Virus record (IMG/VR): IMGVR_UViG_3300038463_000730
Coordinates: 310,001 to 374,000 of that record
Strand: one strand, 5' to 3'
Length of the DNA: 64,000 nucleotides
Shown here: in pieces, positions 1,950-57,820 of the stretch
Position numbering within the stretch: the stretch's first letter is position 1
How the letters are laid out: every line of letters begins with the position of its first letter
Program-made: the position numbers and the translations under genes
Notes under the pieces: model-generated
Databases searched by the model: none
Told to the model about the DNA's origin: nothing
The model's input: only the letters and a program-made list of their open reading frames with translations

Positions 1950-3605
1950 TTACTCGTTGCGAAGATCGTAGACTTTTCCGAAAGGCGGCTTGAAGTTGTG
2001 GCTTGCCGTTAGGATCCAGTAAACCGGAACTTTCGGCTTGGTGCGGGAGTAATCCATGTCACCAAGGTAGCCATCGGTGATCATGATGATGAAGTCACAC
2101 GGCCCAAGCTCCTTCTCATACTCATCGAAGAAGTGTTGGAACGATGTCCCGCCGCGACCAACAACTTTGACTTTGCTAATCTCTTCCCTGTTCGCCTTCT
2201 TGATTTGAACAGTCTCATCCCAATAGATTGTGCAATCTGCCGGGGTGATCGTTCCTTCACCGCGCTCGTCAATGGCCTGAAGCTGCGAAAGTCCCCATGC
2301 CATATCTTCCTGACTCATCGAGCCAGACGTATCGAGACAAACACGGAACCGAGCAAAGAAGTCCTTACGCTTCGGAACCATCAACCCAGCAAACATTTGC
2401 CGAGTGCGGAACCGGTTGTAATCGTTCCGACCATGACCCTGACGAGCCTTCTGGAGCTTGGAACGGATGACATCTTGCCACCGAAGTTTCGGAGCTAAGA
2501 GCTGCCCGATCTCATCTTCCATCCCGCCCGGAATCTTGCCCGCCATGCGCCGAGACAACTCGGCTGCATCCGCAAGACGCTTCGCTAGTTCATCCTGGGA
2601 AGCATCGGCATCCATGTGATCGTCAACCAACGATCCGTACGGACCTTCGCTGTTTCCATGATCGCAGCTATGTCCGCCACCCTGACCCTGGCCTTGACCT
2701 TGCCCATCCTGATCACCGTCACCATCTCCGTCGCCATCTCCGTCACCGTGGTCATGACCTTGGCCTTGACCGGGTTGCTGGCCTCCCTGACCCTGTCCGT
2801 TCTCATCTTCCTCTTCGCCCTGACCTTTGCCTTTGCCCTTCTGTTTCTGACCCTTCTGGTCTCCAGGCTGTTGGCCTCCGGCTTGCTGACCCTTCTGCTT
2901 GCCTTTCTGAGGCTTCTGCTGGCCAGGGACAGGCTTGCCACACTTGGGGCACTTCTGAATCTGCTGGTAGAGGAACTCGTAGATTGCTTCCGGGCGACGC
3001 ATATCATCCGGAATGTTCGGATCAGCGAAGAATACTTTCTTCTTCTCATCCGCTTTCGACATCGGCGTTTTGCCGGAAAGAACATCGGCATACTTCTTCA
3101 GTTCGATGAAATCGCCAAGATGATCCTTGAATAGCTTCGTCGGTTCGAAGCCGCGCGCCTTCAAGTCCGCCATGATGTTGTAGTTCACGATGTAGTCCAC
3201 CGCGATATTCCACAACCAAGGATGACGCCCGCCTCGACGCTGAGGGTGCATGTAGATCGCGTGAAATGCTTCGTGCGCAACGACGAAACGCAAACCCTGG
3301 CGAGACAAACTATTGATGAACTCAGCATTCCAATAGTAACGCTTGCCATCCGTTGCTGCGGTCGTGATCGGGCGGTCACCACCCGGTCCTGTACCGGGAC
3401 CACCAGCAGCGCCCTTCATGTCCCCGCAGAGAACTTGCTCGATCGGAAAGAAGAGCTGGAAGATGAACGGATCGCCACCCAAACCCGAACCAGGAGACTT
3501 GTTATCGTAGCTCAGCGATAGCTCGGTACAAACGGCAGACAACTTGTCTTCTGCCATCGTCTTTGCTTTCGGATCAACTTCGCCGTATACCTTTGTGAAT
3601 TTCAT
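1950..3605 (-). CDS. HExxH metallopeptidase-like domain + vWA domain protein (MoxR partner)
   Basis: VAHEAFHAIYMH zincin motif; MIDAS motif CLDTSGSMS, GRGGTSF, ITDGY; G/Q/D-rich linker; adjacent to AAA+ ATPase. Confidence 0.85.
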   Translation of the reverse strand: MKFTKVYGEVDPKAKTMAEDKLSAVCTELSLSYDNKSPGSGLGGDPFIFQLFFPIEQVLCGDMKGAAGGPGTGPGGDRPITTAATDGKRYYWNAEFINSLSRQGLRFVVAHEAFHAIYMHPQRRGGRHPWLWNIAVDYIVNYNIMADLKARGFEPTKLFKDHLGDFIELKKYADVLSGKTPMSKADEKKKVFFADPNIPDDMRRPEAIYEFLYQQIQKCPKCGKPVPGQQKPQKGKQKGQQAGGQQPGDQKGQKQKGKGKGQGEEEDENGQGQGGQQPGQGQGHDHGDGDGDGDGDGDQDGQGQGQGQGGGHSCDHGNSEGPYGSLVDDHMDADASQDELAKRLADAAELSRRMAGKIPGGMEDEIGQLLAPKLRWQDVIRSKLQKARQGHGRNDYNRFRTRQMFAGLMVPKRKDFFARFRVCLDTSGSMSQEDMAWGLSQLQAIDERGEGTITPADCTIYWDETVQIKKANREEISKVKVVGRGGTSFQHFFDEYEKELGPCDFIIMITDGYLGDMDYSRTKPKVPVYWILTASHNFKPPFGKVYDLRNE

Positions 3606-3704
3606 AGTTCCTCAATGTCTAAGCTATATATCGATAAGAAGAAGAATGGTGGAGCCGCTGCCCAGGCCGAGCCCCCACGGCTCCACCATTCTCACCAGAC
3701 ACCA

Positions 3705-4832
3705 TCACGCGATGCGGTCGTTGATCTTGTCGAGCAACTTGCTCCACCCCGGCTCCTCATCGAGCCCGTGGAGGATGAGGCGATCCAAGTTGATCTGGGA
3801 ACGCGCGGCGATCAGCGCGATTTCCGATTCGATGTTCAGAAGGAACTTCGCGATCATTCCGGCGACCTCGGGATACGTTCCCTCCTTGCAGTCGTCGATC
3901 TTGGCAGCGAGACGAGCGCAAGTGATCATGGCGCACACGATCTGCTTCGTGCGTTCCATTTTGTCGAAGTCCTTCACGGGCTGTCCCTTGAAGATCTTCT
4001 CGACCACCGGCAAGAGAACCTGATAGTGATCGTAGTAATGCTGGAACTGCATACCGATCTGCTTACCGATGCAGCCCGAAACTTTCGTCACGAGAACATT
4101 AACCGGCCAGTTCTTGTCTTCGCCAACTCGCAGAAGTTTGCTGGCGTTGTGCCAGCCGCGGGGGCTGGCCGAGGCATAAGCGTCGCCCTCATCCACGTCA
4201 CCGAAGAGATGCTCCGGGTGATCGTTGATGTATGCCGTAACGGACGGGTGAATCTCACGACTACGCCCGGCCCACTCCAACCACTGACGGTGATCGGACT
4301 CGATCAGATACTTCTCGGCGCGGTCTAGCAAGGGAAGGGAGGGACGTGACCCACCCTCCGCAGCCAAGTTCCCCGTCATGATGCATGACTTGAGGTTCTT
4401 CAGCGCACGACCGTTGCAGCTACGAAACTGCGTGATCTCCAGGAGAGGCGCCCAGAGTGACGGATCCGCCTTGTCAACCTCGTCGAGGAGAAGCGTGACC
4501 TTCCGATTGCCATCGATCAGCTTCTTGTAGAAGAAGGGCATGATGAATTCGAGGAACCGACGATCTGCATTCGGGTCACGAGCCGAAAGCATGTCGGGAT
4601 ACCCACCAAGATCGACGCGCTCCAAAACAGAGAGGTTTAGGTAAACCTCTTCCGTGTCCGAAGCCGCAATCGATTGCTTCGCAATGTGCGTCTTACCAAT
4701 CCCTCGACGTCCAAACAGAGCGGCATTGCCCTCTCCCTGAATCGTACAAATGAGATTCTCTTCCAACTCCCGGGGATTCAACTTCTTGAGGTTGAAGTCC
4801 GAGATTGCCGCAGCTGTTTCCTTCTTTGCCAT
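3705..4832 (-). CDS. MoxR-like AAA+ ATPase
   Basis: Walker A GRRGIGKT, Walker B LLLDEVDKA, sensor TGN, PLLDR arginine finger, SPRGW. Confidence 0.85.
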   Translation of the reverse strand: MAKKETAAAISDFNLKKLNPRELEENLICTIQGEGNAALFGRRGIGKTHIAKQSIAASDTEEVYLNLSVLERVDLGGYPDMLSARDPNADRRFLEFIMPFFYKKLIDGNRKVTLLLDEVDKADPSLWAPLLEITQFRSCNGRALKNLKSCIMTGNLAAEGGSRPSLPLLDRAEKYLIESDHRQWLEWAGRSREIHPSVTAYINDHPEHLFGDVDEGDAYASASPRGWHNASKLLRVGEDKNWPVNVLVTKVSGCIGKQIGMQFQHYYDHYQVLLPVVEKIFKGQPVKDFDKMERTKQIVCAMITCARLAAKIDDCKEGTYPEVAGMIAKFLLNIESEIALIAARSQINLDRLILHGLDEEPGWSKLLDKINDRIA

Positions 4833-9265: not shown

Positions 9266-9694
9266 TTACTGCTGCCCCTGAATGTAAGCGGAGTTTGTTG
9301 TCGTGAACTGCTGTTTCCACTGCCACTCGTCCTGAACATACATCGCATATTCAGCGGATGTGATTTCGATCTCAGGCTCGGTGTGCATCTTCAACATACC
9401 GATCGCGCGCTCATAATCCTTCGTCTGGTTCATCGGCTGAGTAAGATGAATGTAATGCTCGACATGCTTACCTTGCTTGGCAGCTGACAGCATCTTCTCC
9501 AATGTATCGACCATCGCCTTGCGATAACCGACGCACGCCTTCTCGAAGGTTTCGATATGCGTCTTGCAGTTCTCTTCGAGCTTCGCCAACAGAACGTCAA
9601 CCTTAACTTTTACCATTCTCATGCTAATATCCTCTTCGTCGTAAGACAATCCATTTAGAAAATCTGGAATTTCAAACTGATTTGTGAAATTCAT
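9266..9694 (-). CDS. hypothetical helical protein
   Basis: 142 aa, coupled ORF. Confidence 0.7.
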   Translation of the reverse strand: MNFTNQFEIPDFLNGLSYDEEDISMRMVKVKVDVLLAKLEENCKTHIETFEKACVGYRKAMVDTLEKMLSAAKQGKHVEHYIHLTQPMNQTKDYERAIGMLKMHTEPEIEITSAEYAMYVQDEWQWKQQFTTTNSAYIQGQQ

Positions 9695-10026
9695 ACCATG
9701 ATCTCAAACTTGCTAGCACTGATAATTCGTATACTGTAACAGTTTCCGTGCTTATGAAACGTCCACTCGCCCCTAATATATCCCATCTTTATTGTTTGGG
9801 ACTTGACCATTCGAAAGAAGTCCCCGCGTGACATTGGATACTTTCTCTTTGTAGAGACAGAAGTGAAGATGACGTAATCTTGTTTCGCCTGGGTACAACG
9901 CAACGTGTCTTCGAACTTAAAGTTCTCTTTGAACGAGTACCCTGTTGCTGAAGTACGTGCTCGTCTCGGAACACTGCCCGAAAGATCGAACGGAATCATT
10001 ACAATTGGTTTAGTCTTTTTCGTCAA
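9691..10026 (-). CDS. hypothetical protein, tandem paralog 1
   Basis: MIPFDLSGSVPRRA...KENFKFEDTLR...GYIRGEWTF...IISASKFEIM. Confidence 0.75.
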   Translation of the reverse strand: MTKKTKPIVMIPFDLSGSVPRRARTSATGYSFKENFKFEDTLRCTQAKQDYVIFTSVSTKRKYPMSRGDFFRMVKSQTIKMGYIRGEWTFHKHGNCYSIRIISASKFEIMV

Positions 10027-10028
10027 CT

Positions 10029-10397
10029 CTATTCCATAACTTCGAGTTTACTCGCGCTGATGATCTTGATCCCGTAACAATTAGCCCGCTTCACGAATGT
10101 CCACGTGCCTCGAATGTAGCCCATGTTCATCTTTTGTTTCAAAAGAAGGGCGTCGAAGTTTAACATCGACATCGGGTACCGAGCTTTAGTAGTCCTGGAG
10201 ATGAACTCGACATAACACGAGCCACGTGTTATCTGGTAACTGTTGTACCGAAGGGTATCCTCGAATTTGAAGTTTTCCTTCATCGTATAGCCATGAGGCG
10301 GATTGCCTTGGTAACTATACGCTCGTCTCGGAACATTTCCAGAGGCATCGAACGGAATCATAAGAGGAGGCTTCGGCGCAGCAGGTTTTCTCGGCAT
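10029..10397 (-). CDS. hypothetical protein, tandem paralog 2
   Basis: MIPFDASGNVPRRA...KENFKFEDTLR...GYIRGTWTF...IISASKLEVME; start moved to ATG 10397. Confidence 0.75.
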   Translation of the reverse strand: MPRKPAAPKPPLMIPFDASGNVPRRAYSYQGNPPHGYTMKENFKFEDTLRYNSYQITRGSCYVEFISRTTKARYPMSMLNFDALLLKQKMNMGYIRGTWTFVKRANCYGIKIISASKLEVME

Positions 10398-10432
10398 ATT
10401 AACCGAATCGTTCGCCCGTTCCGATCTCGACT

Positions 10433-10720
10433 CTAGAGGAACGCCTTGAATTTGCCGCACATTATCATGGGTCGGTGCTCGGCCTGGTAGACGTCCCAAG
10501 TAGATAGATTGATTGACTTTTGATCAATAAAGCAGGAAACGAAATTGAAATTGATCGTCAAACGCATCGGCATTTTGCAACGGGCGCATTCAACTTCCCA
10601 TGTATGATAGATCTCCGGCGCTGCCGATGGATCTGGATACCGATGACCAAACTTTTTCCGAGCCATCGCAATGGCTTCGTAGATTGGAATTTCTTTCATT
10701 TCATCAAGAGCGTGTTTCAT
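10433..10720 (-). CDS. hypothetical protein (CxxC)
   Basis: Start moved to ATG 10720; CARC; ends KFKAFL. Confidence 0.55.
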   Translation of the reverse strand: MKHALDEMKEIPIYEAIAMARKKFGHRYPDPSAAPEIYHTWEVECARCKMPMRLTINFNFVSCFIDQKSINLSTWDVYQAEHRPMIMCGKFKAFL

Positions 10721-10944
10721 GCTCGACCCGGTCCCGTATGGAGCATCCGACAGCCGTAAGCAAATGTCGCCATGCAGATGAGAAGACCGAGCGCATTGGT
10801 TAAGCCAATCGATATCAATATCATTATGAAGCAATACAGTGGACCGAATGTCAGAGCGGCTATTATCGCGAGATAACCTCCGACCAGCATAGCCTCGGAC
10901 AAATCTGACAAACGCTTAAAACGAAACGACACCTTGAGAGGCAT
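10717..10944 (-). CDS. small membrane protein
   Basis: Two hydrophobic helices. Confidence 0.55.
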   Translation of the reverse strand: MPLKVSFRFKRLSDLSEAMLVGGYLAIIAALTFGPLYCFIMILISIGLTNALGLLICMATFAYGCRMLHTGPGRA

Positions 10945-10986
10945 CTACCTCCCAAAGTGTCGTTGAACCGGAACTCGACTAGAGGA

Positions 10987-12492
10987 CTATCGGGCGCCCG
11001 TCGAGAATTCCAGGATGTACTTAATCCGGTGCTGTTGCGACGGACCGGTCGCGTTGTAGACGATCAATTCGTCGTTGAGCAAAGCCTGACCCATCTTCGC
11101 CCAAACCGAATGGTCTCCTTTTAGATCACCCTTCCGAATGAACGTGGCATTGTGAACGATGCGCTGATTCCCGAACGCACAATCGGCGAGGAACAAAAAC
11201 GCCTTGTCTGCCTGCCCAGCTGCCCAATACGAGCCCCGGACGTCAGTGTAATTGATGCTCTTCGTCGAGTGCGCGGCCCAGTAGATACCGTCACCGAACA
11301 TCGAACCAGCATGCGGAACTCCAGAAGGCCGGATCAATAGTCCCTTCGTCGTGATCCCGACCATGTTGGCTCGCCGCGTTCCGTGCCAAACCGGGATGAC
11401 GTTGGCTCGCTCGTACGCCTTCTGCAATTCCTTCGGAACGTCGGGACGTTCCGGAACATGTCGCTTGAGAATGTCGGGAAGCTGTTGCTTGCCGCATTCC
11501 TTGGCAATCTGCTCGACGTTCGCCAAGAAGTGAGCTTCTTCCTTCTTTCGATTCACCGTGAACGCTCGGTGAAGCTGAAGTTTACCAAGTCCCGAGTGAT
11601 TCCCAGCGCGCGTCTCCAGGAGCATGCGCTGGAGCCATTTGTACGTCAGGGTGGTAGGATCGATGTACTCCAGGTCCGCGTTCAATGTCTCGTACTGAGC
11701 ATCGACCGGAGACTTCGTTGACATGACCTTCTCGGCATTCTTCGCATCTGCAAAGATGTCGAGAATGTCGAACCCCTTGTCGATCTTCGCATCATCATCG
11801 AACCGAAGTAGATCCGCATCGAGGCGCCCATACCCAAAGTTATGCGGGATGTTCGCGTAGTACTTCGACGTGATCCGATTCAACTCGCTCTCGTCGGGCT
11901 TGGATTGGTGAACAATCTTCCGGGCTTCATCGAGAAGGTCACGACCCTTGGCAAGCTGCGCAACGGAGAGCTGCCCGAGCGGACACTTCTTGGTATCGAG
12001 ATTGAGTTCGATGAACTGCGCCGTGGCTCCGAACCATGTTCCGACGAGAGACCGGACTTCTGCGTGAAGCTTGCTCGGTTCACCCTTGGTTTCGACGGTG
12101 TAACCGTTCTTCTTGAGCTGCTCTTCGGTCACGAGCTGTTTCGTAACGATGGCCTTGCCTACTTCGCTTCCCAGGTCGGACTTGACCAGCTCGACCTCTT
12201 CGTAACCCTTCTTCGTCTTCTCTTTGATGATTTGGGCAATCACGGCGTTCGCGTGTGCCTCATTATCGCAGGGACGATACTCTCGGGCCGGATTGTGAGC
12301 ACCGACGCGCCCATACTGGGTATACACACGAACTTTCTTCCCACCCGATGCGGACTGAAGCTCGATGTTGTAATACTTGTTATTGTTTTCGACGATGTCG
12401 GTGAAATTCAGGGTTTTCCTGACCGTAACATCGAAGCTAGCCGGAAACGAGGGTTCGGTACCGGCTTTGCATACTTTGACTTTGTCAACCAT
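10987..12492 (-). CDS. poly(ADP-ribose) polymerase, PARP1-like (WGR + regulatory HD + catalytic ART)
   Basis: WGR-like YTQYGRVG; HD motif PLGQLSVAQL...YYANIPHNFG; catalytic WHGT...GSMFGDGIYWA...KSINY and NDELIVY giving an intact H-Y-E triad. Confidence 0.92.
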   Translation of the reverse strand: MVDKVKVCKAGTEPSFPASFDVTVRKTLNFTDIVENNNKYYNIELQSASGGKKVRVYTQYGRVGAHNPAREYRPCDNEAHANAVIAQIIKEKTKKGYEEVELVKSDLGSEVGKAIVTKQLVTEEQLKKNGYTVETKGEPSKLHAEVRSLVGTWFGATAQFIELNLDTKKCPLGQLSVAQLAKGRDLLDEARKIVHQSKPDESELNRITSKYYANIPHNFGYGRLDADLLRFDDDAKIDKGFDILDIFADAKNAEKVMSTKSPVDAQYETLNADLEYIDPTTLTYKWLQRMLLETRAGNHSGLGKLQLHRAFTVNRKKEEAHFLANVEQIAKECGKQQLPDILKRHVPERPDVPKELQKAYERANVIPVWHGTRRANMVGITTKGLLIRPSGVPHAGSMFGDGIYWAAHSTKSINYTDVRGSYWAAGQADKAFLFLADCAFGNQRIVHNATFIRKGDLKGDHSVWAKMGQALLNDELIVYNATGPSQQHRIKYILEFSTGAR

Positions 12493-12517
12493 GATTCACT
12501 CCTCGGCGTAGGAGTAT

Positions 12518-12546
12518 AGCTTACACATCTATAGCTGAGATGTCAA
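12518..12546 (-). promoter_or_regulatory. sigma70-type promoter for PARP gene
   Basis: TTGACA-17 bp-TAAGCT, followed by a GAGGAG RBS. Confidence 0.7.
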
Positions 12547-13028
12547 GCGCTTTTATTCAGAAAACTAAGTGTCTCCCAACACGTGCCAAGAAGGTTATCA
12601 GATGTCGGAACCTTGTTCTTTTGGCAGCAATACTGCATATACCAGACATGCTCAGCATCGCCCGGAGCACCGAAGATCATTCGCCCAGAGTATAGATACA
12701 TTCCGAACTCTATGTTCGTAGTCAACCCTGGCATGTTCTGCATGTTCCGAGGAACCCAGAACATTACTGCGTCACATTCCTGTAGGTAGGCTTGTTCCCA
12801 ATCAATCTGACAATTGCGATGTTTCCAGATTCCATTCTGAGGTTCTGGAACGATCAGTGTTCCGTCGAACCCAATCGACTCGAAGATTTGGATTGCTTCC
12901 GGTCTCCAACTTTTTACTTCGGCTGACCGTGGAGTCGGTCCGGCCAAGAAAATATGCCGATCTGAAGTCAGATCATCTGAGTCTTCAGGTATCTTCGAAT
13001 CTTTGTCTGAGTAGATTACTTTAATCAT
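12543..13028 (-). CDS. nucleoside 2-deoxyribosyltransferase-like protein
   Basis: IFLAGPTPR...SWR...QIDWE...CDAVMFW...TTNIEFG motif pattern. Confidence 0.75.
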   Translation of the reverse strand: MIKVIYSDKDSKIPEDSDDLTSDRHIFLAGPTPRSAEVKSWRPEAIQIFESIGFDGTLIVPEPQNGIWKHRNCQIDWEQAYLQECDAVMFWVPRNMQNMPGLTTNIEFGMYLYSGRMIFGAPGDAEHVWYMQYCCQKNKVPTSDNLLGTCWETLSFLNKSA

Positions 13029-13324: not shown

Positions 13325-14470
13325 TTACTTCGTAACGAGCTTCAGATACTTCTTGAAATCATCGTCTAGTTCGAACTTAGTACCGTACGGTATCATCAAT
13401 GCTAGCTTACAGTCACCACTAAGCTGTGACATGGTATCATGGTCTTGTTCCGATATCTCCGCGCCAGTCGGATCTTCGTATTTGTAGTATCCGCGTCCGC
13501 CGCTCTTACGGGCCAAGGATGAAACCAACTGAGCCTTCTTCTTCGAAGCCATCGATGTGATAATCTTCGGTGGGATTATATCCGTTGTGCCGAGCTTCTT
13601 GATTAAGGTATGTGTCGTTGACACATCGCAATAGTATCCGTTCTTGATACCTTCCTTGATGTTCGTCTCAAAGTCTTTCGAACCGAAGCCTCCCCAAGTA
13701 TCTAGCCACAGCATTGCTTTCGGTATAGGTTTGTAGCTGAACGTATCTACAAAACCATAGCTGCCATAGCTATGACCTCTAGGGTCTTTCGTCTTGGAGG
13801 TATGAGTAAAGGTAGCCGTGCTGACCCAACCGCAGAATACTTTCTGCTTACCAGTCTTCCCCTCGAAGACATCTCCAACCTGAAATGTCGAAGCATCAAG
13901 CTTCTTGGAATTGTTCGCGGCTACAGCCGCCAACAAACCCTTGTGCAATTCCGAACCAACCCGAATGAGTTTCATCTGCGAGCCAACTCGTCCGAAGATG
14001 AACTTACCATTCAGAATGCCACCCGGGCTAATACCCTCTTTGATCATGGCATCGAGCATAACGTCTTCCCGCATGTCGAAGTAATACTTCTCAGCGGTCT
14101 TGACCTTGTAAGCCCGACCACCATTGCCACGGTGTTCGAGAGCAACTACCTGGATACCGGTCATGGGCTCATTCTTTCGAGCATCCTGAACAACCGGGTC
14201 AGACTTCTTCAGGTACTTCTTAGTCTCCGGGTCATACCATTGCCGATGTTGCTCGGCCCACTGAATGGCAGTCTTTAGTGTCTTCTTGTTCCCAGATTCG
14301 ATTGGGAACGCCGGGATGATCATCTCCCGTCTCTCATCAATCTTGACGGTTTCACCGTCGTCATCAACTTCATCTTGATCGAGACTTTCGCCCTCCCATT
14401 GCCGGTAGACGGGCTGCTCGACGCTAGATACGATTGTGATCTCTTCGGGTATTGTTCCAATAACTCTCAT
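13325..14470 (-). CDS. hypothetical protein (381 aa)
   Basis: Long ORF with protein-like composition; family not recognised. Confidence 0.75.
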   Translation of the reverse strand: MRVIGTIPEEITIVSSVEQPVYRQWEGESLDQDEVDDDGETVKIDERREMIIPAFPIESGNKKTLKTAIQWAEQHRQWYDPETKKYLKKSDPVVQDARKNEPMTGIQVVALEHRGNGGRAYKVKTAEKYYFDMREDVMLDAMIKEGISPGGILNGKFIFGRVGSQMKLIRVGSELHKGLLAAVAANNSKKLDASTFQVGDVFEGKTGKQKVFCGWVSTATFTHTSKTKDPRGHSYGSYGFVDTFSYKPIPKAMLWLDTWGGFGSKDFETNIKEGIKNGYYCDVSTTHTLIKKLGTTDIIPPKIITSMASKKKAQLVSSLARKSGGRGYYKYEDPTGAEISEQDHDTMSQLSGDCKLALMIPYGTKFELDDDFKKYLKLVTK

Positions 14471-14513
14471 AACGAGAGCTGATGTTCAGCGCCGAACGAC
14501 TCGACAAACGAAC

Positions 14514-15110
14514 CTACTTGAGGTTCATCAGTCGATCGATTTTTTGGATCAAATCGTCCCGAGTAGTAAACTGGAGGACGTTCGGTTTCGGATGAATCTT
14601 GCCGGAATGATCCGTATCCGAAATATCGGTACGCATCGTTACCCAATCGAGATGGACCCGGTACAATCTATTCTTCTCTTTGAAGCGAATATCCTCGCCG
14701 GTTAAAAGAAGTTCCCTGTACTTCATGGAGTACAGGTTGTACTGGTAACTATACTCTATGGCATGGTAGTGCCGTATGTTTTGGCAAACAACATGTTCGT
14801 TACGAACGACCCAGTGTTCTTTCTCCCGGCCACGAATACGAAGACCATTGTTCACCAAGCTCAGTGTCATATTGAGCTTCGATTCCACCGGAACGACCAT
14901 ACTGATTTTGCGAAGACGGTTACCAACCCGAGGCTGATCAACTCCCAAGGCGGGTGTTCCGAACACCGCGCCTTTCTTCTTTTTCGGTTCGATGTTGGCT
15001 TTTTTATCCCACTCAAAATCACCCTTGTTGCCCTTGGAGAACTTCTTCTCACAATAAATGCAACAGCCATCCCGACTATTGAGCATCGCTCCTAACGTTG
15101 TGAACTGCAT
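14514..15110 (-). CDS. hypothetical protein (CxxC; shared C-terminal motif)
   Basis: CCIYC; ends KIDRLMNLK. Confidence 0.7.
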   Translation of the reverse strand: MQFTTLGAMLNSRDGCCIYCEKKFSKGNKGDFEWDKKANIEPKKKKGAVFGTPALGVDQPRVGNRLRKISMVVPVESKLNMTLSLVNNGLRIRGREKEHWVVRNEHVVCQNIRHYHAIEYSYQYNLYSMKYRELLLTGEDIRFKEKNRLYRVHLDWVTMRTDISDTDHSGKIHPKPNVLQFTTRDDLIQKIDRLMNLK

Positions 15111-15137: not shown

Positions 15138-17015
15138 TTACCCAGCCATCTTCACGAAAGCATCTTCCGAAATGAGCTTCACATTGAACTTACGAGCCGC
15201 TTGCGCCTTCGAGCTGGTGCTGGCCGGGTCGTCGATTACAAGGTAGTCCAGAGACTTCCCTACGCTCTTCAACTGCCCACCCTTCGACTCGACCAACGTT
15301 TCCAACTCGGCGCGCTTACGCTTCATCGCTCCGGTGAAGCAGAAGGTTTTACCGGTCAGTGTCCCGAAGATCTTTGCCTTGATCTTTACGCCGTTCTTCT
15401 GGAGATCCTGGATCAATCCGGCGTTGCTTACCAGCCCGTCAAACAACGAACTAGCCTTCTCCGGCCCGAACCCTGGAACGTTCTTCAACTCGTTCTCCGT
15501 GATCTTCATGATCTTGGGGAGAGAGTCGTACCCCGCATCCATGACCATTCTGATCATACTCGCGCCAATCATCGGAATGTTTAGACCACCAAGGAAGTTA
15601 TCGAGCGTGACCTCGCTGTTGGCCCACAATGAGTCGTAAAGGTTCTGCGCCGATTTCTCGCCCATGCGGTCCAGCGCAGCCAACTCCTTCACAGTGAGCG
15701 TATATAGGTCAGCAATCGTCTTGACCTTCTTTGTCTCGTAGAGCTTCTCGACAACCGAGGTTCCCCATTCGAGAATATTGTGCTGAGCAATCCACGAATA
15801 AATGCGCCCCTTGACTTGGGCCGGGCAACCAACGACGTTTGTGCAGATGAGGAAGTCACCTTCGAACTTCGTATCACCCTTGCACTCCGGGCACTTCCTT
15901 GGATACTTCCTGATCGAACCGGTTGTCGTGATGCACTCGTAGACGCGAGGAATAACATCGTTCGAACGCCCGACCAGGATCTCGGCGCCAATGTCGATCG
16001 CAAGCTGACGAACGTACTTGTAATTGTAAAGGCTAGCCCGAGTTACCTTCGCACCAGTCAACGTGACTTCATCGAAGATGCACACCGGAGTAATGTTACC
16101 CGTGTTCCCTACTGAGTCCTCAACATCCCGACAGAACGTCCGGGCCTTCTCGGACTCGAACTTGTACGCCGTGGCACCGTGCGGCTTCAGGTCTTTGTCG
16201 CCCATAGCGATCTGTTCATGCATGTTGTTGACACGCACGACCAATCCATCGATGTCGTAGTCCAACCCGTCACGAGTACTGGCTTGGTAACGGTTCCAAA
16301 TCTTGTTGATCTCTTCGACCGTATCGACGACGCCCCAATTCGGAACCTGCGCGCCGATCTTCTCCAACCACTCAAACTGGTCTTTCTCTGTTTTGAAATC
16401 GACCGTTCCGAGAGACTGGTAGAGAAGGATATCGATATGCTCGACGTCTTTCCCATCGAGCCGCTTCGCCACACCACCAGCGCCGTTCCGAAGGTTCGAC
16501 ATGTCCTTGAAGTGCTTCGCATGGTTCGATCGGAACATGATGATCTCACCACGCAAGCTTCCGGTGAAGGTAGCCGGAACCTTCGTCGGGAGACCATGCA
16601 TCTTGCGCACGTTGACCGTGATATCCTCACCGGTCTTCCCGTCGCCTCTCGTGATACCTTGTACGAGCTTGCCCTTGTCGTAGATCATCTCGATCGAGAT
16701 GCCATCGAGCTTCTCTGTCCAGAAGAGCTTACCCTTGGCTGAGGATGGAAGATTCTTGACCCACTGAGTCATCTCGTCCGGCGTCTGAACCTTCTCCAAG
16801 CTCCCCATCGGGATCTCGTGTCGAGCCTTCTTCCAAGCGGAGTTGACCGGGGCACCGGTCATCGTAAGGGAGGGATGGTTCGGATCCTCGGCTCGCATCT
16901 CAGCGCAAAGCGTGTCGAATGCTGCATCCGACATGATCGGCTTGCTTGTGTTGTAGTACGCAAGCCGTGCCGCAATGATCCGATCGCCCAGCTTCTTGAT
17001 GTCTACCTTGTTCAT
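15138..17015 (-). CDS. ligA: NAD-dependent DNA ligase
   Basis: AYYN...MSDAAFD domain Ia; EKLDG adenylation motif; TRGDG, LRGEI, DGLVVRVN, AYKF; C4 zinc finger; HhH repeats; C-terminal BRCT. Confidence 0.96.
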   Translation of the reverse strand: MNKVDIKKLGDRIIAARLAYYNTSKPIMSDAAFDTLCAEMRAEDPNHPSLTMTGAPVNSAWKKARHEIPMGSLEKVQTPDEMTQWVKNLPSSAKGKLFWTEKLDGISIEMIYDKGKLVQGITRGDGKTGEDITVNVRKMHGLPTKVPATFTGSLRGEIIMFRSNHAKHFKDMSNLRNGAGGVAKRLDGKDVEHIDILLYQSLGTVDFKTEKDQFEWLEKIGAQVPNWGVVDTVEEINKIWNRYQASTRDGLDYDIDGLVVRVNNMHEQIAMGDKDLKPHGATAYKFESEKARTFCRDVEDSVGNTGNITPVCIFDEVTLTGAKVTRASLYNYKYVRQLAIDIGAEILVGRSNDVIPRVYECITTTGSIRKYPRKCPECKGDTKFEGDFLICTNVVGCPAQVKGRIYSWIAQHNILEWGTSVVEKLYETKKVKTIADLYTLTVKELAALDRMGEKSAQNLYDSLWANSEVTLDNFLGGLNIPMIGASMIRMVMDAGYDSLPKIMKITENELKNVPGFGPEKASSLFDGLVSNAGLIQDLQKNGVKIKAKIFGTLTGKTFCFTGAMKRKRAELETLVESKGGQLKSVGKSLDYLVIDDPASTSSKAQAARKFNVKLISEDAFVKMAG

Positions 17016-17066: not shown

Positions 17067-17990
17067 TTACTGTTTCGGGCCTTCACATAGTAGCCGGTCA
17101 AGCTTGCAAAGATTGTCATACTCCTCGACAACCTTCTTATACTCCTCCGGGATACCGTCGAGACCGAAGTAGATTCCAGCCAACCCGCCCGCCATTGCAG
17201 CGATCGTATCGGCATCGCCGCCACCCTTCACGGCGTTGACGACTATGTTTCGGTATCCATAGTGGCGGCTGACGCAATAGAATGCCGCCGCGACACTTTC
17301 GACAACATATCCAGACGTACCGATTACTTCCATTGCAATGGTCGGAGCAATGTCTTTCTCGGCCAACCTGCTCGCAACCAGGAGATGTTGTTTGGTAGCT
17401 GAGTCGGGAAGATGTTCGACGACCTTCTTAATCAGATCCTTCGGCGTTGCTTCGGACCGAGCAAGCAATGCTGCCCCGACAGCAACCGCTACGCCGCCCA
17501 GAATGCACTCCTCGACTTGGTGTGTAATCGATGCATCGATTCGGATGTTGGCCTTGACCTGATCCAAGTCCCGACGAAAGTAGACTCCCATCGGGCAAGC
17601 TCGCATTGCCGTACCGTTTCCTCCAACCGGGATGCCAGTCGGGCCAAGGTGAACGCCGCTCTTATCGAACGGGACGCCTCTCTCCAGACTTTGCATGGCG
17701 GTTCGGGTTGTCCCACCCATTCCGCGGGCGCCGGTCTGGTACCATTCGAGGTAAGCCCGAGCCATGTCGGGACCATCGAACCCGTTCGAGCGAAGCAAAC
17801 TCTTGGTCATTGCCAAGCTCATTTGCGTATCGTCGGTGAACTGACCCGGTTCGAGCTTGTGATATGTCCCTTGAAGGAAATTCCCATCCCAATCTTTGAA
17901 CATCGGGTTCTGAGGAGCTTTCATTTCGAAAGGCATTCCCAAACTGTCACCGATTGCTGTTCCGACCAAACACGCACATTCGTTATTCAT
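17067..17990 (-). CDS. ADP-ribosylglycohydrolase (DraG/ARH family)
   Basis: GTAIGDSLG, FTDDTQM, GNGTAMR, GGDADTIAAMAG motifs. Confidence 0.92.
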   Translation of the reverse strand: MNNECACLVGTAIGDSLGMPFEMKAPQNPMFKDWDGNFLQGTYHKLEPGQFTDDTQMSLAMTKSLLRSNGFDGPDMARAYLEWYQTGARGMGGTTRTAMQSLERGVPFDKSGVHLGPTGIPVGGNGTAMRACPMGVYFRRDLDQVKANIRIDASITHQVEECILGGVAVAVGAALLARSEATPKDLIKKVVEHLPDSATKQHLLVASRLAEKDIAPTIAMEVIGTSGYVVESVAAAFYCVSRHYGYRNIVVNAVKGGGDADTIAAMAGGLAGIYFGLDGIPEEYKKVVEEYDNLCKLDRLLCEGPKQ

Positions 17991-22971: not shown

Positions 22972-23239
22972 TTGCTTCTTTCAAAAGTTTAAGCTTGTCG
23001 AGCTTTAAGTAAATCGTAGTTGTTTGACTATAGCCGCAGATATCATAGTCAGGATGTTCCATCGTATCGATTGTTTCGATCACAATGTCTTTGACTAGTT
23101 CGGCAGACTCTCTTTCGATTAGACCGGCGTCAAGCAAAACGCCCGCGACGCAACTTCCGCGTTCTTCAACGCGGCGATGAAGACGGATATGTTTATCGAT
23201 GAGCTTCTGAGTTTCGTTCCAAGTTAAGGGATTTTCCAT
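22934..23239 (-). CDS. hypothetical protein
   Basis: Start moved to ATG 23239. Confidence 0.55.
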   Translation of the reverse strand: MENPLTWNETQKLIDKHIRLHRRVEERGSCVAGVLLDAGLIERESAELVKDIVIETIDTMEHPDYDICGYSQTTTIYLKLDKLKLLKEANGQSSHINQESR

Positions 23240-23957
23240 TAGTATCCTTGAGGGTTGGCCCTCGGTTGTGCAAATGAGCAAAGAGCGCAAGATTATATTC
23301 TCCAAAAGAACCTTGAGTAAGAACGGAAGGTCGAACCCATGCCACGCAGCCTTCCTCGTCTGAGTGGATCTCGCCGGAATATCGTCCGGTGTAAGCCGTG
23401 CAAATGAATTCATGTTCCGTGCGAACGAAGATTTCCTCGGTCGGAATGAAATCCAGCCCGGTTTCTTCTTTCACTTCACGAACGATCGCCTGTTCCGGGG
23501 TTTCGCCCGGGTCTACTTTCCCACCAGGCAACCCGAAGTCGTTCCGGTTATTCTTCCGCGAAACCGCCAGGAACAACCCGTCAGGGCTGTTAATCACCGC
23601 TGTAACGGCTCGACGAAGCTTCGGAGCATCACATGTCGGGCAAGGCAAATCCTCGTGGAGATGGTTCGTGCAATAGTCACAACCTGAACGTGCCCGAGCT
23701 TCGTCTTCCAATTCGAGACGATACATCGTCTCTTCGGAGATGACCTCGTGATTGAACTTGTACTTTCGGTACGACTCGATAAATGTTTTCCAGAAGGCTT
23801 GTTGCGCTTCATTCAGCGCAGCAATTCGGCATCGAATCATTCGCCATGCGGCTTCTGACCCGTTACAGCCTTCAATTACGTGAAAGCGGAATTCTTCGAA
23901 CAATCCTCTGAGTTGGCCCATCCCTTCGGATGTAGGGCCGGGATCGGCACTCGACAA
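23193..23957 (-). CDS. Nudix hydrolase with N-terminal extension and CxxC pair
   Basis: Nudix box GLPGGKVDPGETPEQAIVREVKEETGL; CDYC...CPTC. Confidence 0.85.
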   Translation of the reverse strand: MSSADPGPTSEGMGQLRGLFEEFRFHVIEGCNGSEAAWRMIRCRIAALNEAQQAFWKTFIESYRKYKFNHEVISEETMYRLELEDEARARSGCDYCTNHLHEDLPCPTCDAPKLRRAVTAVINSPDGLFLAVSRKNNRNDFGLPGGKVDPGETPEQAIVREVKEETGLDFIPTEEIFVRTEHEFICTAYTGRYSGEIHSDEEGCVAWVRPSVLTQGSFGEYNLALFAHLHNRGPTLKDTNGKSLNLERNSEAHR

Positions 23958-54224: not shown

Positions 54225-54518
54225 TCACTTTCTTCCTAATGCACAACCGGTATGCGGCATACACTCCAATCCATAGATTGTTTGGCCTACCGCTAGATCA
54301 CATTTGTCATAGCGATAGTTCCACTCTTGACAATGAATAGCGGTTGGTTCGAGCTTCATTTGGTTGGCCCATGTTTTCGCCGCATCTTCCGCCCAACCTG
54401 GATTTACCGGCGTCCCACGCGCAAAAGCGAAAACAAGTGCCACGAAAGCTATCATGATAAAAAAGATAGCCGTAGCCATCAAAAGAATGAATCTACCTCT
54501 ATCACGTTCAAGCAGCAT
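54225..54518 (-). CDS. membrane-anchored Cys-containing protein
   Basis: N-terminal TM helix, four Cys. Confidence 0.6.
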   Translation of the reverse strand: MLLERDRGRFILLMATAIFFIMIAFVALVFAFARGTPVNPGWAEDAAKTWANQMKLEPTAIHCQEWNYRYDKCDLAVGQTIYGLECMPHTGCALGRK

Positions 54519-55980: not shown

Positions 55981-55989
55981 TCATGCCTC

Positions 55990-57409: not shown

Positions 57410-57415
57410 TGTATT

Positions 57416-57805: not shown

Positions 57806-57820
57806 AGTAATTCTCCATTT

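What the first reader, a model, noticed from the sequence alone, without database searches (positions are those of the whole stretch)
10987..12492. Phage-borne PARP1-like enzyme with full WGR-HD-ART architecture and its own sigma70 promoter
Seen: WGR-like domain, autoinhibitory helical domain (PLGQLS...IPHNFG) and catalytic H-Y-E triad, collinear with the core of eukaryotic PARP1/2, under a near-consensus TTGACA-17-TAAGCT promoter. Established: WGR+HD couples DNA-break binding to activation, and the catalytic Glu is needed for chain elongation; classical phage ARTs (T4 Alt/ModA/ModB) are mono-ARTs of another class. PARP-like genes in bacteria and viruses are rare but reported. Inference: early-expressed, DNA-break-activated PARylation used for host takeover, phage DNA repair or anti-defence.
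Basis: partly seen in the sequence, partly recalled or inferred. Interest (0 to 1): 0.72.

Follow-up and report, generated by a model that had tools for sequence, protein, structure and literature searches.

The report
Megaphage PARP linked to DNA ligase
A 435-kb phage from peat carries an intact PARP-type ADP-ribosyltransferase (DNA-sensing WGR domain, helical regulatory domain, catalytic domain); the same kind of gene lies near a DNA ligase gene in many other phages and some bacteria, which points to a role in handling DNA nicks and breaks, but phage PARPs of this kind are already on record.

Summary
The gene is real. ORF 10987..12492 (-) encodes 501 aa with WGR, PARP_reg and PARP catalytic domains, all above the Pfam cut-offs. 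H370, Y404 and E475 are invariant in 28 relatives, and the AF2 model matches PARP1 WGR-CAT bound to a DNA break. The replicon is a phage: 434,688 bp, TerL present, 17 tRNAs in the window, peat metagenome.

The enzyme is not eukaryote-derived. It sits in a prokaryote/phage lineage with YGR instead of WGR, a short loop before the catalytic Glu (as in PAR-active C. difficile PARP) and a clade-specific insertion of about 35-40 aa.

The main new result is gene context. The gene ends a co-directional cluster ARH - NAD-dependent ligase (LigA) - 2 unknowns - NDT-like - PARP, closed by a conserved terminator-like hairpin. LigA lies 2-8 kb upstream in 30 of 33 related loci. Other PARP lineages sit beside LigA, ATP-dependent ligases or Ku. 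NAMPT and NMNAT-NUDIX genes are also in the window.

The promoter is weak on its own (-10 matches 3 of 6; 1 site against 1.58 expected). Its two blocks are conserved in the nearest relative.

My best reading is a break- or nick-sensing ADP-ribosyltransferase that works with the phage ligase. Activity, poly versus mono modification and timing of expression are untested. Three-domain phage PARPs and the "NAD-jumbo phage" PARP+LigA idea are already published or annotated, so this is a new member of a known kind.

The parts
10987..12492 (-). PARP gene, 501 aa plus stop
   Evidence: ORF. Pfam finds three domains. PDB phmmer matches PARP2/PARP1. AF2 model with Foldseek match.
12193..12417 (-). WGR domain (aa 26-100). 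The signature reads Y60-G61-R62. N36/N38/K39/Y41 and K92/K94/K95/Y97 are invariant.
   Evidence: Pfam PF05406, E 4.8e-16. Invariant columns in A1. YGR is the usual bacterial form (PMC5966428).
11698..12075 (-). Helical regulatory (HD, PARP_reg) domain, aa 140-265. It includes PLGQLS (L172, L175) and the Asp cluster D242/D245/D249.
   Evidence: Pfam PF02877, E 7.4e-19. Alignments A1 and A2.
10990..11643 (-). ART catalytic domain, aa 284-501. Key residues are H370, G371, Y404, K411, S412, Y415 and E475.
   Evidence: Pfam PF00644, E 3.9e-21. These residues are invariant in 28 of 28 sequences. Aligned to vertebrate PARP1 in A2.
11407..11532 (-). Clade-specific insertion (about aa 321-362), modelled as helix-loop-helix, between the first ART strands and the catalytic His
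   Evidence: Gap between the two phmmer stretches. A2 alignment. Spacing of about 70 against 30-39 residues elsewhere. pLDDT 84-93.
12518..12546 (-). Promoter-like site TTGACA-17-TAAGCT, followed directly by TATACT. It contains the palindrome ACATCT-N7-AGATGT, and the upstream gene's TGA stop lies inside the -35 hexamer.
   Evidence: Both blocks are conserved in L095.
12499..12503 (-). Shine-Dalgarno AGGAG, 6 nt before the ATG
   Evidence: Read from the sequence. GGAG is conserved in L095 and L096.
10915..10964 (-). Terminator-like 18-bp hairpin plus U-rich tail, beginning 23 nt after the PARP stop codon. It also covers the GGGAGG and ATG of a doubtful 75-aa ORF.
   Evidence: Fold of -30.6 kcal/mol, z -5.6. 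Conserved with paired changes and the same TTTCGTTTT tail in L095.
12543..13028 (-). Nucleoside 2-deoxyribosyltransferase-like gene directly upstream of PARP
   Evidence: Pfam PF15891, E 2.1e-10. Same position in L095.
13325..15110 (-). Two genes of unknown function (381 aa and 198 aa) between LigA and the NDT-like gene
   Evidence: Only PHROGs of unknown function match.
15138..17015 (-). NAD+-dependent DNA ligase (LigA) with Ia, adenylation, OB, HhH and BRCT domains
   Evidence: Pfam. phrog_3869, 4e-152. Upstream of PARP on the same strand in 30 of 33 related loci.
17067..17990 (-). ADP-ribosylglycohydrolase (ARH family), a candidate eraser
   Evidence: Pfam PF03747, E 1e-70. PDB matches ARH3, DraG and MJ1187 at about 1e-20. 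Present in 5 of 5 related megaphage genomes.
23193..23957 (-). NUDIX hydrolase
   Evidence: Pfam PF00293, E 4.4e-18.
43861..44796 (-). Polynucleotide kinase / 3'-phosphatase
   Evidence: Pfam AAA_33 plus PNK3P.
54508..55980 (-). Nicotinamide phosphoribosyltransferase (NAMPT/NadV)
   Evidence: Pfam NAPRTase 1.2e-56 plus NAMPT_N 1.2e-23.
58090..59121 (-). NMN adenylyltransferase-NUDIX fusion (NatV/NadM-like)
   Evidence: Pfam CTP_transf_like plus NUDIX.

Best explanation
The ORF encodes a catalytically competent PARP-family ADP-ribosyltransferase of the prokaryote/phage lineage. Its layout is the minimal PARP2/3-like one: WGR (YGR variant), autoinhibitory helical domain, and an H-Y-E ART domain.

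Proposed mechanism, inferred by homology with PARP1/2 and the bacterial PARPs. The WGR domain binds a nick or break in replicating or damaged phage DNA, or in host DNA. This loosens the helical domain and opens the NAD+ site. The ART domain then ADP-ribosylates itself or nearby targets, possibly with chains. The mark coordinates end protection and sealing by the phage's own DNA ligase. The ARH hydrolase, and perhaps the NUDIX and macro-like proteins, remove and recycle the ADP-ribose. The phage NAMPT and NMNAT rebuild NAD+ from the nicotinamide (from PARP) and NMN (from LigA) that the two enzymes release.

Shown here: the domain architecture, the catalytic and NAD-site residues, strong purifying conservation, the phage context, the gene-cluster layout and its terminator-like end, recurrent PARP-ligase/Ku linkage, and placement outside the eukaryotic clade.

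Inferred only: DNA-dependent activation, polymer formation, the targets, cooperation with the ligase, and NAD+ recycling.
For: Architecture and fold. All three Pfam domains pass their cut-offs. PDB phmmer gives PARP2 at 2e-31. The AF2 model has pLDDT 77.5, and its best Foldseek hits are PARP1 WGR-CAT bound to a double-strand break (7s6m, 8g0h; TM 0.65-0.69, E 4e-26).

Active site. H370, G371, Y404, K411, S412, Y415 and E475 are invariant in 28 of 28 relatives of 56-81% identity, and they align with the corresponding vertebrate PARP1 residues. The three WGR motifs and the HD leucines and aspartates that PMC5966428 singles out for bacterial PARPs are also conserved. The H-to-E spacing is 105, close to the 106 of PAR-active CdPARP (H322, E428).

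Context in the window. The cluster ARH-LigA-x-x-NDT-PARP is co-directional, with gaps of 27-296 nt. It ends in a conserved hairpin with a U-tract. The same gene order is seen in L095, and ARH...LigA...PARP in L096.

Ligase linkage in the clade. LigA lies on the same strand 2-8 kb upstream in 30 of 33 related loci, although the genes in between vary.

Independent juxtapositions elsewhere:
- Kofleriaceae MAGs have LigA adjacent and divergent.
- Syntrophomonas and an Archaeoglobales-MAG scaffold have LigA 0.7-3.5 kb upstream.
- One contig has Ku and an ATP-dependent ligase 2-5 kb upstream.
- Huge phage LR756511 and Cellulophaga phage phi17:2 have ATP-dependent ligases 0.4 kb, or one gene, downstream.
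- One contig has an SNF2 helicase immediately downstream.
Because two unrelated ligase classes are involved, the link is to ligation, not to a shared cofactor.

Wider NAD/ADP-ribose set. ARH is present in 5 of 5 related megaphages. NAMPT, NMNAT-NUDIX and PNK are in the window. HaPARP is DNA-dependent and makes PAR, and CdPARP makes PAR in vitro (PMC4245714 and PMC8120803).
Against: There is no biochemical or expression evidence for this or any other phage PARP; none was found in 6 literature searches, and no RNA run was listed as holding the gene.

H-Y-E is necessary but not sufficient for polymer synthesis. PARP3 and PARP4 carry the triad yet act as mono-transferases (from my own knowledge).

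No PARG is encoded.

Synteny within one phage clade may reflect inherited gene order rather than functional coupling. Ligase linkage is absent around the Klebsiella FBKp34 and XacN1 PARPs and in 42 of 46 bacterial loci.

The predicted LigA-PARP(ART) complex gave no answer.

The D-loop region of the model (aa 371-400) has low confidence.
Confidence: 0.6

Rival explanations
1. Host-takeover or anti-defence effector. Like T4 Alt/ModA/ModB, the enzyme would ADP-ribosylate host proteins (RNA polymerase, translation factors, defence proteins) to redirect or disarm the cell. The WGR would merely localise it to nucleic acid.
For: [quoted passage not shown] The Klebsiella FBKp34 and XacN1 PARPs have no ligase nearby. 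The phage carries NAD+ salvage genes, which in other phages counter NAD-depleting defences (from my own knowledge).
Against: The WGR and the autoinhibitory HD are strictly conserved, which implies a gated, nucleic-acid-triggered enzyme rather than a constitutive effector. PARP is repeatedly linked to ligases and Ku. No PADLOC or anti-defence family hits were found in the cluster.
Confidence: 0.2
2. DNA-end ADP-ribosyltransferase. As PARP2 and PARP3 can do in vitro, the enzyme would transfer ADP-ribose onto terminal phosphates at nicks or ends. This would reversibly cap phage DNA termini or replication intermediates against host exonucleases until the ligase acts. ARH, macro-like or NADAR-type hydrolases would remove the cap.
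For: The WGR-HD-ART minimal layout is the one shared with PARP2/3. PARP is linked with ligases, Ku and PNK, which process DNA ends. An ARH lies in the same cluster, and a NADAR gene lies 1.5 kb downstream of PARP in relative L005. NADARs reverse DNA ADP-ribosylation (PMC11125620).
Against: This is pure inference: no prokaryotic or phage PARP has been shown to modify DNA. NADAR is absent from this genome. The conserved catalytic Glu and the CdPARP-like geometry fit protein and PAR modification equally well.
Confidence: 0.12
3. A passenger gene captured from a cell, with no role in the phage, or a decaying gene.
For: Bacterial PARPs are patchily distributed and are attributed to horizontal transfer (PMC4245714). 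IMG/VR labels the record 'provirus'.
Against: There are 689 homologues with the same three domains, many on contigs of 420-503 kb. Mean column identity is 72% and all catalytic residues are invariant. Synteny is conserved. The clade-specific insertion is shared by a well-supported clade (100/98). The protein is clearly separate from the eukaryote clade (100/100).
Confidence: 0.03

Closest known systems
[quoted passage not shown]
   Same: Three-domain WGR-PARP_reg-PARP_cat layout of about 430-500 aa with no Zn fingers. YGR replaces WGR. The H-Y-E triad is present. The loop before the catalytic Glu is short (H-to-E spacing 105, against 106 in CdPARP). The WGR and HD motifs are conserved. These bacterial enzymes make PAR in vitro, and HaPARP needs DNA.
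   Different: The phage protein falls in a separate clade from the named Bacillota, Myxococcota, Planctomycetota and Armatimonadota PARPs. It carries an extra helix-loop-helix of about 35-40 aa before the catalytic His. It is encoded by a virus. Its activity is untested. I did not have the HaPARP or CdPARP sequences themselves in the tree.
Eukaryotic PARP2/PARP3 and the WGR-HD-ART core of PARP1
   Same: Same domain order. About 28-30% identity over the whole core. The predicted fold superposes on PARP1 WGR-CAT bound to DNA. The NAD-site residues and the HD 'PLGxLS' leucines are conserved.
   Different: There are no N-terminal Zn fingers, BRCT or a basic tail. Tyr replaces the WGR Trp. About 22-28 residues of the eukaryotic acceptor loop are missing. 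The clade-specific insertion is present. The protein lies outside the eukaryote clade (100/100). No HPF1 or PARG partner is encoded; an ARH is present instead.
Annotated phage PARPs: Klebsiella phage vB_KpM_FBKp34 (QQV91759.1), Xanthomonas phage XacN1 (BBA65562.1), Cellulophaga phages phi4:1 and phi17:2, huge phage LR756511
   Same: All are phage-encoded WGR + ART proteins. FBKp34 has all three Pfam domains and is annotated that way. The Cellulophaga and LR756511 genes sit next to a DNA ligase.
   Different: FBKp34, XacN1 and Cellulophaga fall in another clade, with Sulfurovum and Thioploca contigs. Only LR756511 groups with the query's clade. They are shorter (383-428 aa) and lack the insertion. 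Their ligases are ATP-dependent, not LigA.
'NAD-jumbo phages' (Microbiome 2024, PMC11662467)
   Same: The concept is the same: jumbo phages that encode NAD+ synthesis together with NAD-dependent ligase and a 'PARP1' DNA-damage sensor, proposed to serve self-repair. This window has NAMPT, NMNAT-NUDIX, LigA and PARP.
   Different: That study concerns gut phages and rests on annotation only. It does not report physical PARP-ligase linkage, the insertion, ARH co-occurrence or a phylogeny. This phage comes from peat and is about 435 kb.
T4 Alt / ModA / ModB
   Same: They are phage-encoded, NAD+-using ADP-ribosyltransferases.
   Different: They belong to the R-S-E clade, act as mono-ARTs (or RNAylate), and have no WGR or HD (PMC9503650). 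The protein here belongs to the H-Y-E/PARP clade.

Membership tests
DNA-dependent PARPs (PARP1/2/3-type, WGR-HD-ART) | ART catalytic domain with the H-Y-E triad | tested here: met
   PF00644 E 3.9e-21. H370, Y404 and E475 are invariant in 28 of 28 sequences and align to vertebrate PARP1.
DNA-dependent PARPs (PARP1/2/3-type, WGR-HD-ART) | NAD+-site residues beyond the triad (Gly after His; the Lys-Ser...Tyr motif) | tested here: met
   G371, K411, S412 and Y415 are invariant and aligned in A2.
DNA-dependent PARPs (PARP1/2/3-type, WGR-HD-ART) | Helical regulatory (autoinhibitory) domain N-terminal to the ART | tested here: met
   PF02877 E 7.4e-19, covering 127 of 135 profile positions. L172 and L175, and D242/D245/D249, are conserved.
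DNA-dependent PARPs (PARP1/2/3-type, WGR-HD-ART) | WGR domain with the Trp-Gly-Arg signature | tested here: met
   PF05406 E 4.8e-16. The signature reads Tyr-Gly-Arg (Y60, G61, R62, invariant). That is the majority form in bacterial PARPs (PMC5966428), not the eukaryotic Trp.
DNA-dependent PARPs (PARP1/2/3-type, WGR-HD-ART) | Three-dimensional arrangement like WGR-CAT of PARP1/2 | tested here: met
   Foldseek top hits are 7s6m, 8g0h and 4dqy (PARP1 on a double-strand break) and 6x0l (PARP2), with TM 0.61-0.69 and E down to 4e-26. The model's mean pLDDT is 77.5.
DNA-dependent PARPs (PARP1/2/3-type, WGR-HD-ART) | Activation by DNA nicks or breaks | not testable with these tools
   Supported only indirectly by conserved WGR and HD motifs and by the ligase/Ku gene neighbourhoods.
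DNA-dependent PARPs (PARP1/2/3-type, WGR-HD-ART) | Synthesis of poly(ADP-ribose) chains | not testable with these tools
   The catalytic Glu is present, and the H-to-E spacing (105) matches PAR-active CdPARP (106). However, H-Y-E does not guarantee polymer formation.
Eukaryotic PARP1 specifically | N-terminal zinc fingers, BRCT and the long eukaryotic acceptor loop; membership of the eukaryote clade | tested here: not met
   The protein starts 25 aa before the WGR. The H-to-E spacing is 105 against 126-132 in the eukaryote clade. It lies outside the eukaryote clade (100/100).
Prokaryotic/phage PARPs (HaPARP/CdPARP type) | About 400-500 aa, WGR(YGR)-HD-ART, short acceptor loop, prokaryotic or viral replicon | tested here: met
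   It forms its own insertion-bearing subclade.
Reversible PAR system (writer plus eraser) | A PARG-type glycohydrolase in the same genome | tested here: not met
   PF10021 finds nothing in the 434,688-bp genome. The eukaryotic-type PARG family was not searched.
Reversible PAR system (writer plus eraser) | An alternative ADP-ribosyl hydrolase (ARH or macro) | tested here: met
   ARH at 17067..17990 (E 1e-70), and in 5 of 5 related megaphages. A weak macro-like protein lies at about 285.4 kb in G000.
'NAD-jumbo phage' NAD+ synthesis and use set | Phage-encoded NAD+ salvage (NAMPT + NMNAT) together with NAD-dependent enzymes | tested here: met
   NAMPT at 54508..55980, NMNAT-NUDIX at 58090..59121, and LigA at 15138..17015.
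T4 Alt/Mod-type phage mono-ARTs | R-S-E catalytic motif, no WGR or HD | tested here: not met
   H-Y-E with WGR and HD. No such family appears among the Pfam or PHROG hits.

The most novel reading that the evidence does not exclude
PARP and DNA ligase (NAD- or ATP-dependent, sometimes with Ku) form an ancient, mobile break-signalling and sealing module in tailed phages and some bacteria. This would be a prokaryotic-virus counterpart of the eukaryotic PARP-XRCC1/Lig3 and PARP3-Ku axes. In this reading the clade-specific helix-loop-helix insertion in the ART domain is the adaptor or regulatory surface of the module, or the enzyme caps DNA ends with ADP-ribose until the ligase acts. It would mean that ADP-ribose signalling at DNA breaks operates inside phage-infected bacteria.
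Probability: 0.25. Interest if true: 0.72.

Novelty: new member of a known kind. Interest (0 to 1): 0.45.

Why it matters
The function of prokaryotic and phage PARPs is still listed as unknown (PMC8120803), and no experimental study of a phage PARP was found. This analysis shows that a large clade of 420-500-kb environmental phages keeps an intact, strongly conserved three-domain PARP. It also shows that PARP genes in several independent lineages lie beside DNA ligases of two unrelated classes, Ku or an SNF2 helicase. That turns 'what do non-eukaryotic PARPs do?' into a concrete hypothesis that can be tested: sensing of nicks or breaks coupled to ligation, with NAD+ supplied by the phage itself. 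It also bears on the origin of eukaryotic PAR signalling. The gene as such, however, is not a new kind of thing.

Tried and rejected
- blastn of the gene against GenBank phages found no match. Only protein-level partial hits exist.
A 10/12-mer survey and a genome-wide count of TTGACA-N16-18-TANNNT found no recurrent promoter motif and no enrichment.
- The element TTTGTCGAGAAA, conserved upstream of PARP in more distant relatives, occurs in the window only at chance level.
- Bacterial-type PARG, NADAR and Phage_sheath_1 were not found in the genome. The Macro and Terminase_6N Pfam hits were below cut-off. The terminase was then confirmed with PHROGs.
- PADLOC gave no defence-system hits for PARP or its neighbours.
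- RNA evidence: no run was listed as holding the gene, so read laying was not used and expression timing is untested.
- Complex prediction on LigA plus PARP aa 270-501 returned 'no answer' (score 0.01). This is neither for nor against binding.
- The search for related loci with the diverse alignment A2 failed for lack of a conserved stretch. It was redone with A3.
- Contexts of P0124, P0125 and P0129 were too short or uninformative.
- The idea of a recent capture from a eukaryote is rejected by the tree. The idea of a decaying passenger gene is rejected by conservation.
- tblastn with two phage ATP-dependent ligases found no further ATP-ligase in the fetched loci or in the genome. Distant ligases could have been missed.
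Full report
**1. What is there**

The minus strand carries an ATG-started ORF at 10987..12492 that encodes 501 aa. An AGGAG lies 6 nt upstream of the start. Pfam finds three domains in the PARP1/2 order, all well above their curated cut-offs: WGR (aa 26-100, E 4.8e-16), PARP_reg, the helical domain (aa 140-265, E 7.4e-19, 127 of 135 profile positions), and the PARP catalytic domain (aa 284-466, E 3.9e-21). phmmer against PDB sequences gives PARP2 (2e-31) and PARP1 (1e-29). It aligns in two stretches, aa 27-320 and aa 363-464, which reveals an insertion relative to the eukaryotic enzymes. PHROGs places the protein in phrog_23333, labelled 'polymerase'. The triad is H370, Y404 and E475, and I checked the codons on the DNA (11383-11385, 11281-11283, 11068-11070).

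**2. The replicon is a phage**

The window is bases 310001-374000 of a 434,688-bp IMG/VR virus record. CheckV rates it 100% complete, and IMG/VR labels it 'provirus'. The record encodes a large terminase (phrog_675, 3.6e-56). The window alone has 17 tRNA genes and long arrays of small co-directional genes. Runs holding the sequence are peat metagenomes. The host is unknown.

**3. Conservation**

The word-indexed search found 689 proteins at E <= 1e-3. The 120 best share 56-81% identity and the same three Pfam domains, and many lie on contigs of 420-503 kb. So this is a core gene of a clade of very large environmental phages.

In an alignment of 28 members, mean column identity is 72%. The invariant positions include:
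- the WGR signature, which reads Y60-G61-R62;
- N36, N38, K39 and Y41;
- K92, K94, K95 and Y97;
- the HD leucines L172 and L175, in PLGQLS;
- H370, G371, Y404, K411, S412, Y415 and E475.

The three WGR blocks and the HD leucines are the positions that a study of bacterial PARPs flagged as linked to DNA-dependent activity. That study also states that Tyr is the commonest first residue of the 'WGR' motif in bacteria (PMC5966428).

**4. Structure**

An AF2 model built on that alignment has mean pLDDT 77.5 and pTM 0.63. The linker at aa 101-140 and the D-loop region at aa 371-400 have low confidence. Foldseek against the PDB ranks human PARP1 WGR-CAT bound to a DNA double-strand break first (7s6m, 8g0h; TM 0.64-0.69, E about 4e-26). 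PARP2 on DNA follows.

**5. How it differs from eukaryotic PARPs**

I aligned the protein with a vertebrate PARP1 (P0222, named by its source), two protist PARPs and short prokaryote-type proteins. Three differences stand out.

- The protein has nothing N-terminal to the WGR.
- A helix-loop-helix of about 35-40 residues (about aa 321-362, pLDDT 84-93) is inserted between the first ART strands and the catalytic His. The spacing from the conserved 'T....NH' motif to the His-Gly is about 70 residues in this clade and 30-39 in nearly all other rows.
- The segment before the catalytic Glu is short. The H-to-E spacing is 105 here and 100-113 in all prokaryote and phage sequences, against 126-132 in the eukaryote clade.

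C. difficile CdPARP is reported as highly active in PAR synthesis. Its residues H322 and E428 give the same spacing, 106. The short loop therefore does not argue against polymer formation.

**6. Phylogeny**

A careful IQ-TREE analysis (87 rows, 443 columns, LG+C20 PMSF) gives these groupings:
- A eukaryote-like clade (100/100). Three of its members are named eukaryotic by their sources; the rest were assigned by length and clustering.
- A clade of named bacterial PARPs from Bacillota, Myxococcota, Planctomycetota and Armatimonadota.
- A separate clade (100/98) holding the query's insertion-bearing group together with the group of huge phage LR756511.
- Another clade holding the Klebsiella FBKp34, XacN1 and Cellulophaga phage PARPs together with Sulfurovum and Thioploca contigs.

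The deep order of these groups is weakly supported (86/76, 91/60), and the tree is unrooted. The bootstrap had not fully settled. A larger quick tree of 159 rows gave the same partition. I conclude that this is not a recent capture from a eukaryote, and that phage PARPs have more than one origin or are very old. One member of the insertion clade lies on GC-rich Kofleriaceae MAG contigs (L058, L065, L085), so the type also occurs in bacteria or their prophages.

**7. Gene context in the window**

Read along the minus strand, the order is:

| Gene | Coordinates | Evidence |
|---|---|---|
| ADP-ribosylglycohydrolase (ARH) | 17067..17990 | E 1e-70 |
| NAD+-dependent DNA ligase with BRCT | 15138..17015 | Pfam domains |
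| Unknown, 198 aa | 14514..15110 | no family |
| Unknown, 381 aa | 13325..14470 | PHROGs of unknown function only |
| Nucleoside 2-deoxyribosyltransferase-like | 12543..13028 | E 2.1e-10 |
| PARP | 10987..12492 | see section 1 |

The gaps between these genes are 27-296 nt. An 18-bp hairpin begins 23 nt after the PARP stop codon and is followed by a U-rich tail. It folds at -30.6 kcal/mol, with z -5.6 against shuffles.

In the nearest relative (P0002, 81% identity, L095) the whole order is the same. The hairpin is kept there with paired substitutions and the same TTTCGTTTT tail. PARP thus looks like the last gene of a transcription unit.

Further genes of the NAD/ADP-ribose and DNA-end network lie in the window:
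- NUDIX (23193..23957);
- polynucleotide kinase/3'-phosphatase (43861..44796);
- NAMPT (54508..55980);
- an NMNAT-NUDIX fusion (58090..59121).

The genome has no bacterial-type PARG and no NADAR. It has a weak macro-like protein.

**8. Comparative context (the most informative result)**

In 33 related loci, tblastn finds LigA upstream of PARP on the same strand, 2-8 kb away, in 30. Two of the three exceptions have little or no upstream sequence. None of the intervening window genes is conserved there. ARH is not adjacent in the more distant relatives, but it is present in 5 of 5 complete or near-complete related genomes. NAMPT is present in 3 of those 5.

Outside the megaphage clade, PARP again sits by end-joining or end-processing genes:
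- Kofleriaceae contigs have LigA immediately adjacent and divergent. It is 42% identical to the phage LigA, and a GyrB-like ATPase lies next to it.
- Syntrophomonas palmitatica and an Archaeoglobales-MAG scaffold have LigA 3.5 kb and 0.7 kb upstream.
- The P0132 contig has a metallophosphatase, an ATP-dependent ligase and Ku 2-5 kb upstream.
- The P0127 contigs have an SNF2-family helicase directly downstream.
- Huge phage LR756511 has an ATP-dependent ligase 0.4 kb downstream. Cellulophaga phage phi17:2 has one a single gene downstream.

Because NAD-dependent and ATP-dependent ligases are unrelated in cofactor use, the recurrent association is with ligation or end joining, not with NAD+.

Three caveats apply. 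I did not run a formal, phylogenetically corrected enrichment test. Only 4 of 46 bacterial loci show the linkage. FBKp34 and XacN1 do not show it.

**9. Promoter**

TTGACA-17-TAAGCT is present at 12518-12546 (-). By itself it is unremarkable:
- The -10 hexamer matches at 3 of 6 positions.
- The scan tool does not list the site.
- One site is found against 1.58 expected.
- There is no genome-wide enrichment.

The upstream gene's TGA stop lies within the -35 hexamer. A palindrome, ACATCT-N7-AGATGT, fills the spacer.

In its favour, L095 conserves AAAAGCnCTTGAC and GTGTAnGnTATACT at identical spacing, while 11 of the 15 spacer positions differ. This footprint is typical of a two-block promoter. 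TATACT, 22 nt from the -35 hexamer, is an alternative -10.

Against generality, L096 has no intergenic space. Ten more distant relatives instead share an invariant TTTGTCGAGAAA about 110 nt upstream, a variable hairpin and a GACTnA...ATAGTC palindrome. None of these is in the window above chance.

No RNA run was listed as holding the gene. 'Own promoter' is therefore plausible, and 'early-expressed' is untested.

**10. Mechanism**

The following are shown:
- an intact, strongly constrained WGR-HD-ART enzyme with every NAD-site residue;
- a phage replicon;
- a cluster with ARH and LigA;
- phage-encoded NAD+ salvage;
- recurrent ligase and Ku neighbourhoods.

The rest is inferred from the established behaviour of PARP1/2 and from the in-vitro data on HaPARP and CdPARP cited in PMC4245714 and PMC8120803. 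In that model, WGR binding to a nick or break relieves HD autoinhibition. The ART then ADP-ribosylates itself or nearby targets. Ligase action is coordinated by this mark. ARH and NUDIX remove and recycle ADP-ribose. NAMPT and NMNAT regenerate NAD+ from the nicotinamide and NMN released by PARP and LigA.

Whether chains or single units are made, and on protein or on DNA ends, cannot be decided here. The rival readings are host-protein modification for takeover or anti-defence, DNA-end capping, and a passenger gene. They are weighed in the structured fields. A predicted LigA-PARP(ART) complex returned 'no answer', and PADLOC found nothing.

**11. Novelty**

Phage PARPs were listed in 2014 (Aeh1, Cellulophaga phi4:1; PMC4245714), in 2021 (XacN1; PMC7824862) and in 2022 (PMC9503650). 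GenBank annotates the FBKp34 protein as WGR + regulatory + catalytic, which I confirmed. A 2024 paper proposes that jumbo phages with NAD+ synthesis use LigA and a 'PARP1' sensor for self-repair (PMC11662467).

I did not find the following in the literature I could search: the megaphage clade with its insertion, the physical PARP-ligase/Ku linkage across lineages, ARH co-occurrence, or the placement outside eukaryotes. My verdict is that this is a real and well-preserved feature, a new member of a known kind, of moderate interest.

Noticed in passing
window 10915-10964 (-) and the ORF 10717..10944 (-): The terminator-like hairpin after PARP encloses the GGGAGG and ATG of a predicted 75-aa ORF with two hydrophobic segments. 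Either that ORF is spurious, or its translation is masked by the hairpin. In relative L095 the gene caller starts the next gene after the hairpin.
   Followed up: partly
window 9691..10026 (-) and 10029..10499 (-): Two adjacent small genes are paralogues (54% identity over 110 aa, E 1e-37). They hit only PHROGs of unknown function (phrog_18619, phrog_22450). Weak relatives of the larger one lie a few kb downstream of PARP in four related loci.
   Followed up: partly
L006, L010-L012, L018, L022, L025, L026, L028, L035: about 40-140 nt upstream of PARP: Ten more distant relatives share an invariant TTTGTCGAGAAA about 110 nt upstream of PARP. It is followed by a hairpin whose stem sequence varies while the pairing is kept (loops such as GAAA, TTCG, GCAA), and then by a GACTnA...ATAGTC palindrome just before the ribosome-binding site. 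The 12-mer occurs about once per 20-kb locus, mostly at this position, so this looks like a PARP-specific regulatory leader. It is not present in the window.
   Followed up: partly
window 63599-63674 and 63693-63768 (-): ARAGORN calls two tRNA-like genes with undetermined identity (two-base 'anticodons' tc and tt) beside 15 ordinary tRNAs.
   Followed up: no
window 54508..59121 (-): NAMPT and an NMNAT-NUDIX fusion (an NAD+ salvage pair, as in vibriophage KVP40) flank a radical-SAM protein (56444..57409) and two genes of unknown function.
   Followed up: partly
window 43861..44796 (-): A polynucleotide kinase/3'-phosphatase lies in the middle of the tRNA-rich region. This suggests a T4-like tRNA or DNA end-repair capacity, although the only ligase I detected in the genome is LigA.
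   Followed up: no
window 1950..4832 (-): A DUF2201 metallopeptidase/VWA-like protein (551 aa) lies next to an AAA ATPase (375 aa), a pair resembling MoxR-VWA modules.
   Followed up: no
L085 (ENA contig k141_1133494), L058 and L065 (Kofleriaceae MAGs): GC-rich (66%) myxobacterial contigs carry the phage-type, insertion-bearing PARP back-to-back with a LigA that is 42% identical to the phage LigA, next to a GyrB-like ATPase. In at least one case the same MAG also has an ordinary bacterial-type PARP. This suggests the PARP-LigA pair moves as a module between phages and bacteria.
   Followed up: partly
L086 and L087 (P0127 contigs); contig of P0132 (no DNA held): On phage-like contigs, PARP is followed directly by an SNF2-family helicase, or preceded by metallophosphatase, ATP-dependent ligase and Ku. 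These partner types recall the eukaryotic PARP-ALC1 and PARP-NHEJ connections.
   Followed up: partly
G000 (whole record): IMG/VR labels this and several related 430-480-kb records 'provirus', and the identical PARP protein is also listed on a 502,994-bp contig. I found no terminal repeat and did not examine whether host flanks were trimmed or whether the label is an artefact of the many cell-like genes.
   Followed up: no
L005 13.0-13.4 kb and 18.3-18.8 kb; L004 14.6-19.4 kb: Relatives carry a NADAR domain protein 1.5 kb downstream of PARP and a YpsA/DprA-like (SLOG) protein. They also carry a CCA-adding enzyme, a Ro60/TROVE homologue, Thg1 and a PheRS-like gene. The clade has a rich RNA-repair and NAD/ADP-ribose repertoire.
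   Followed up: no
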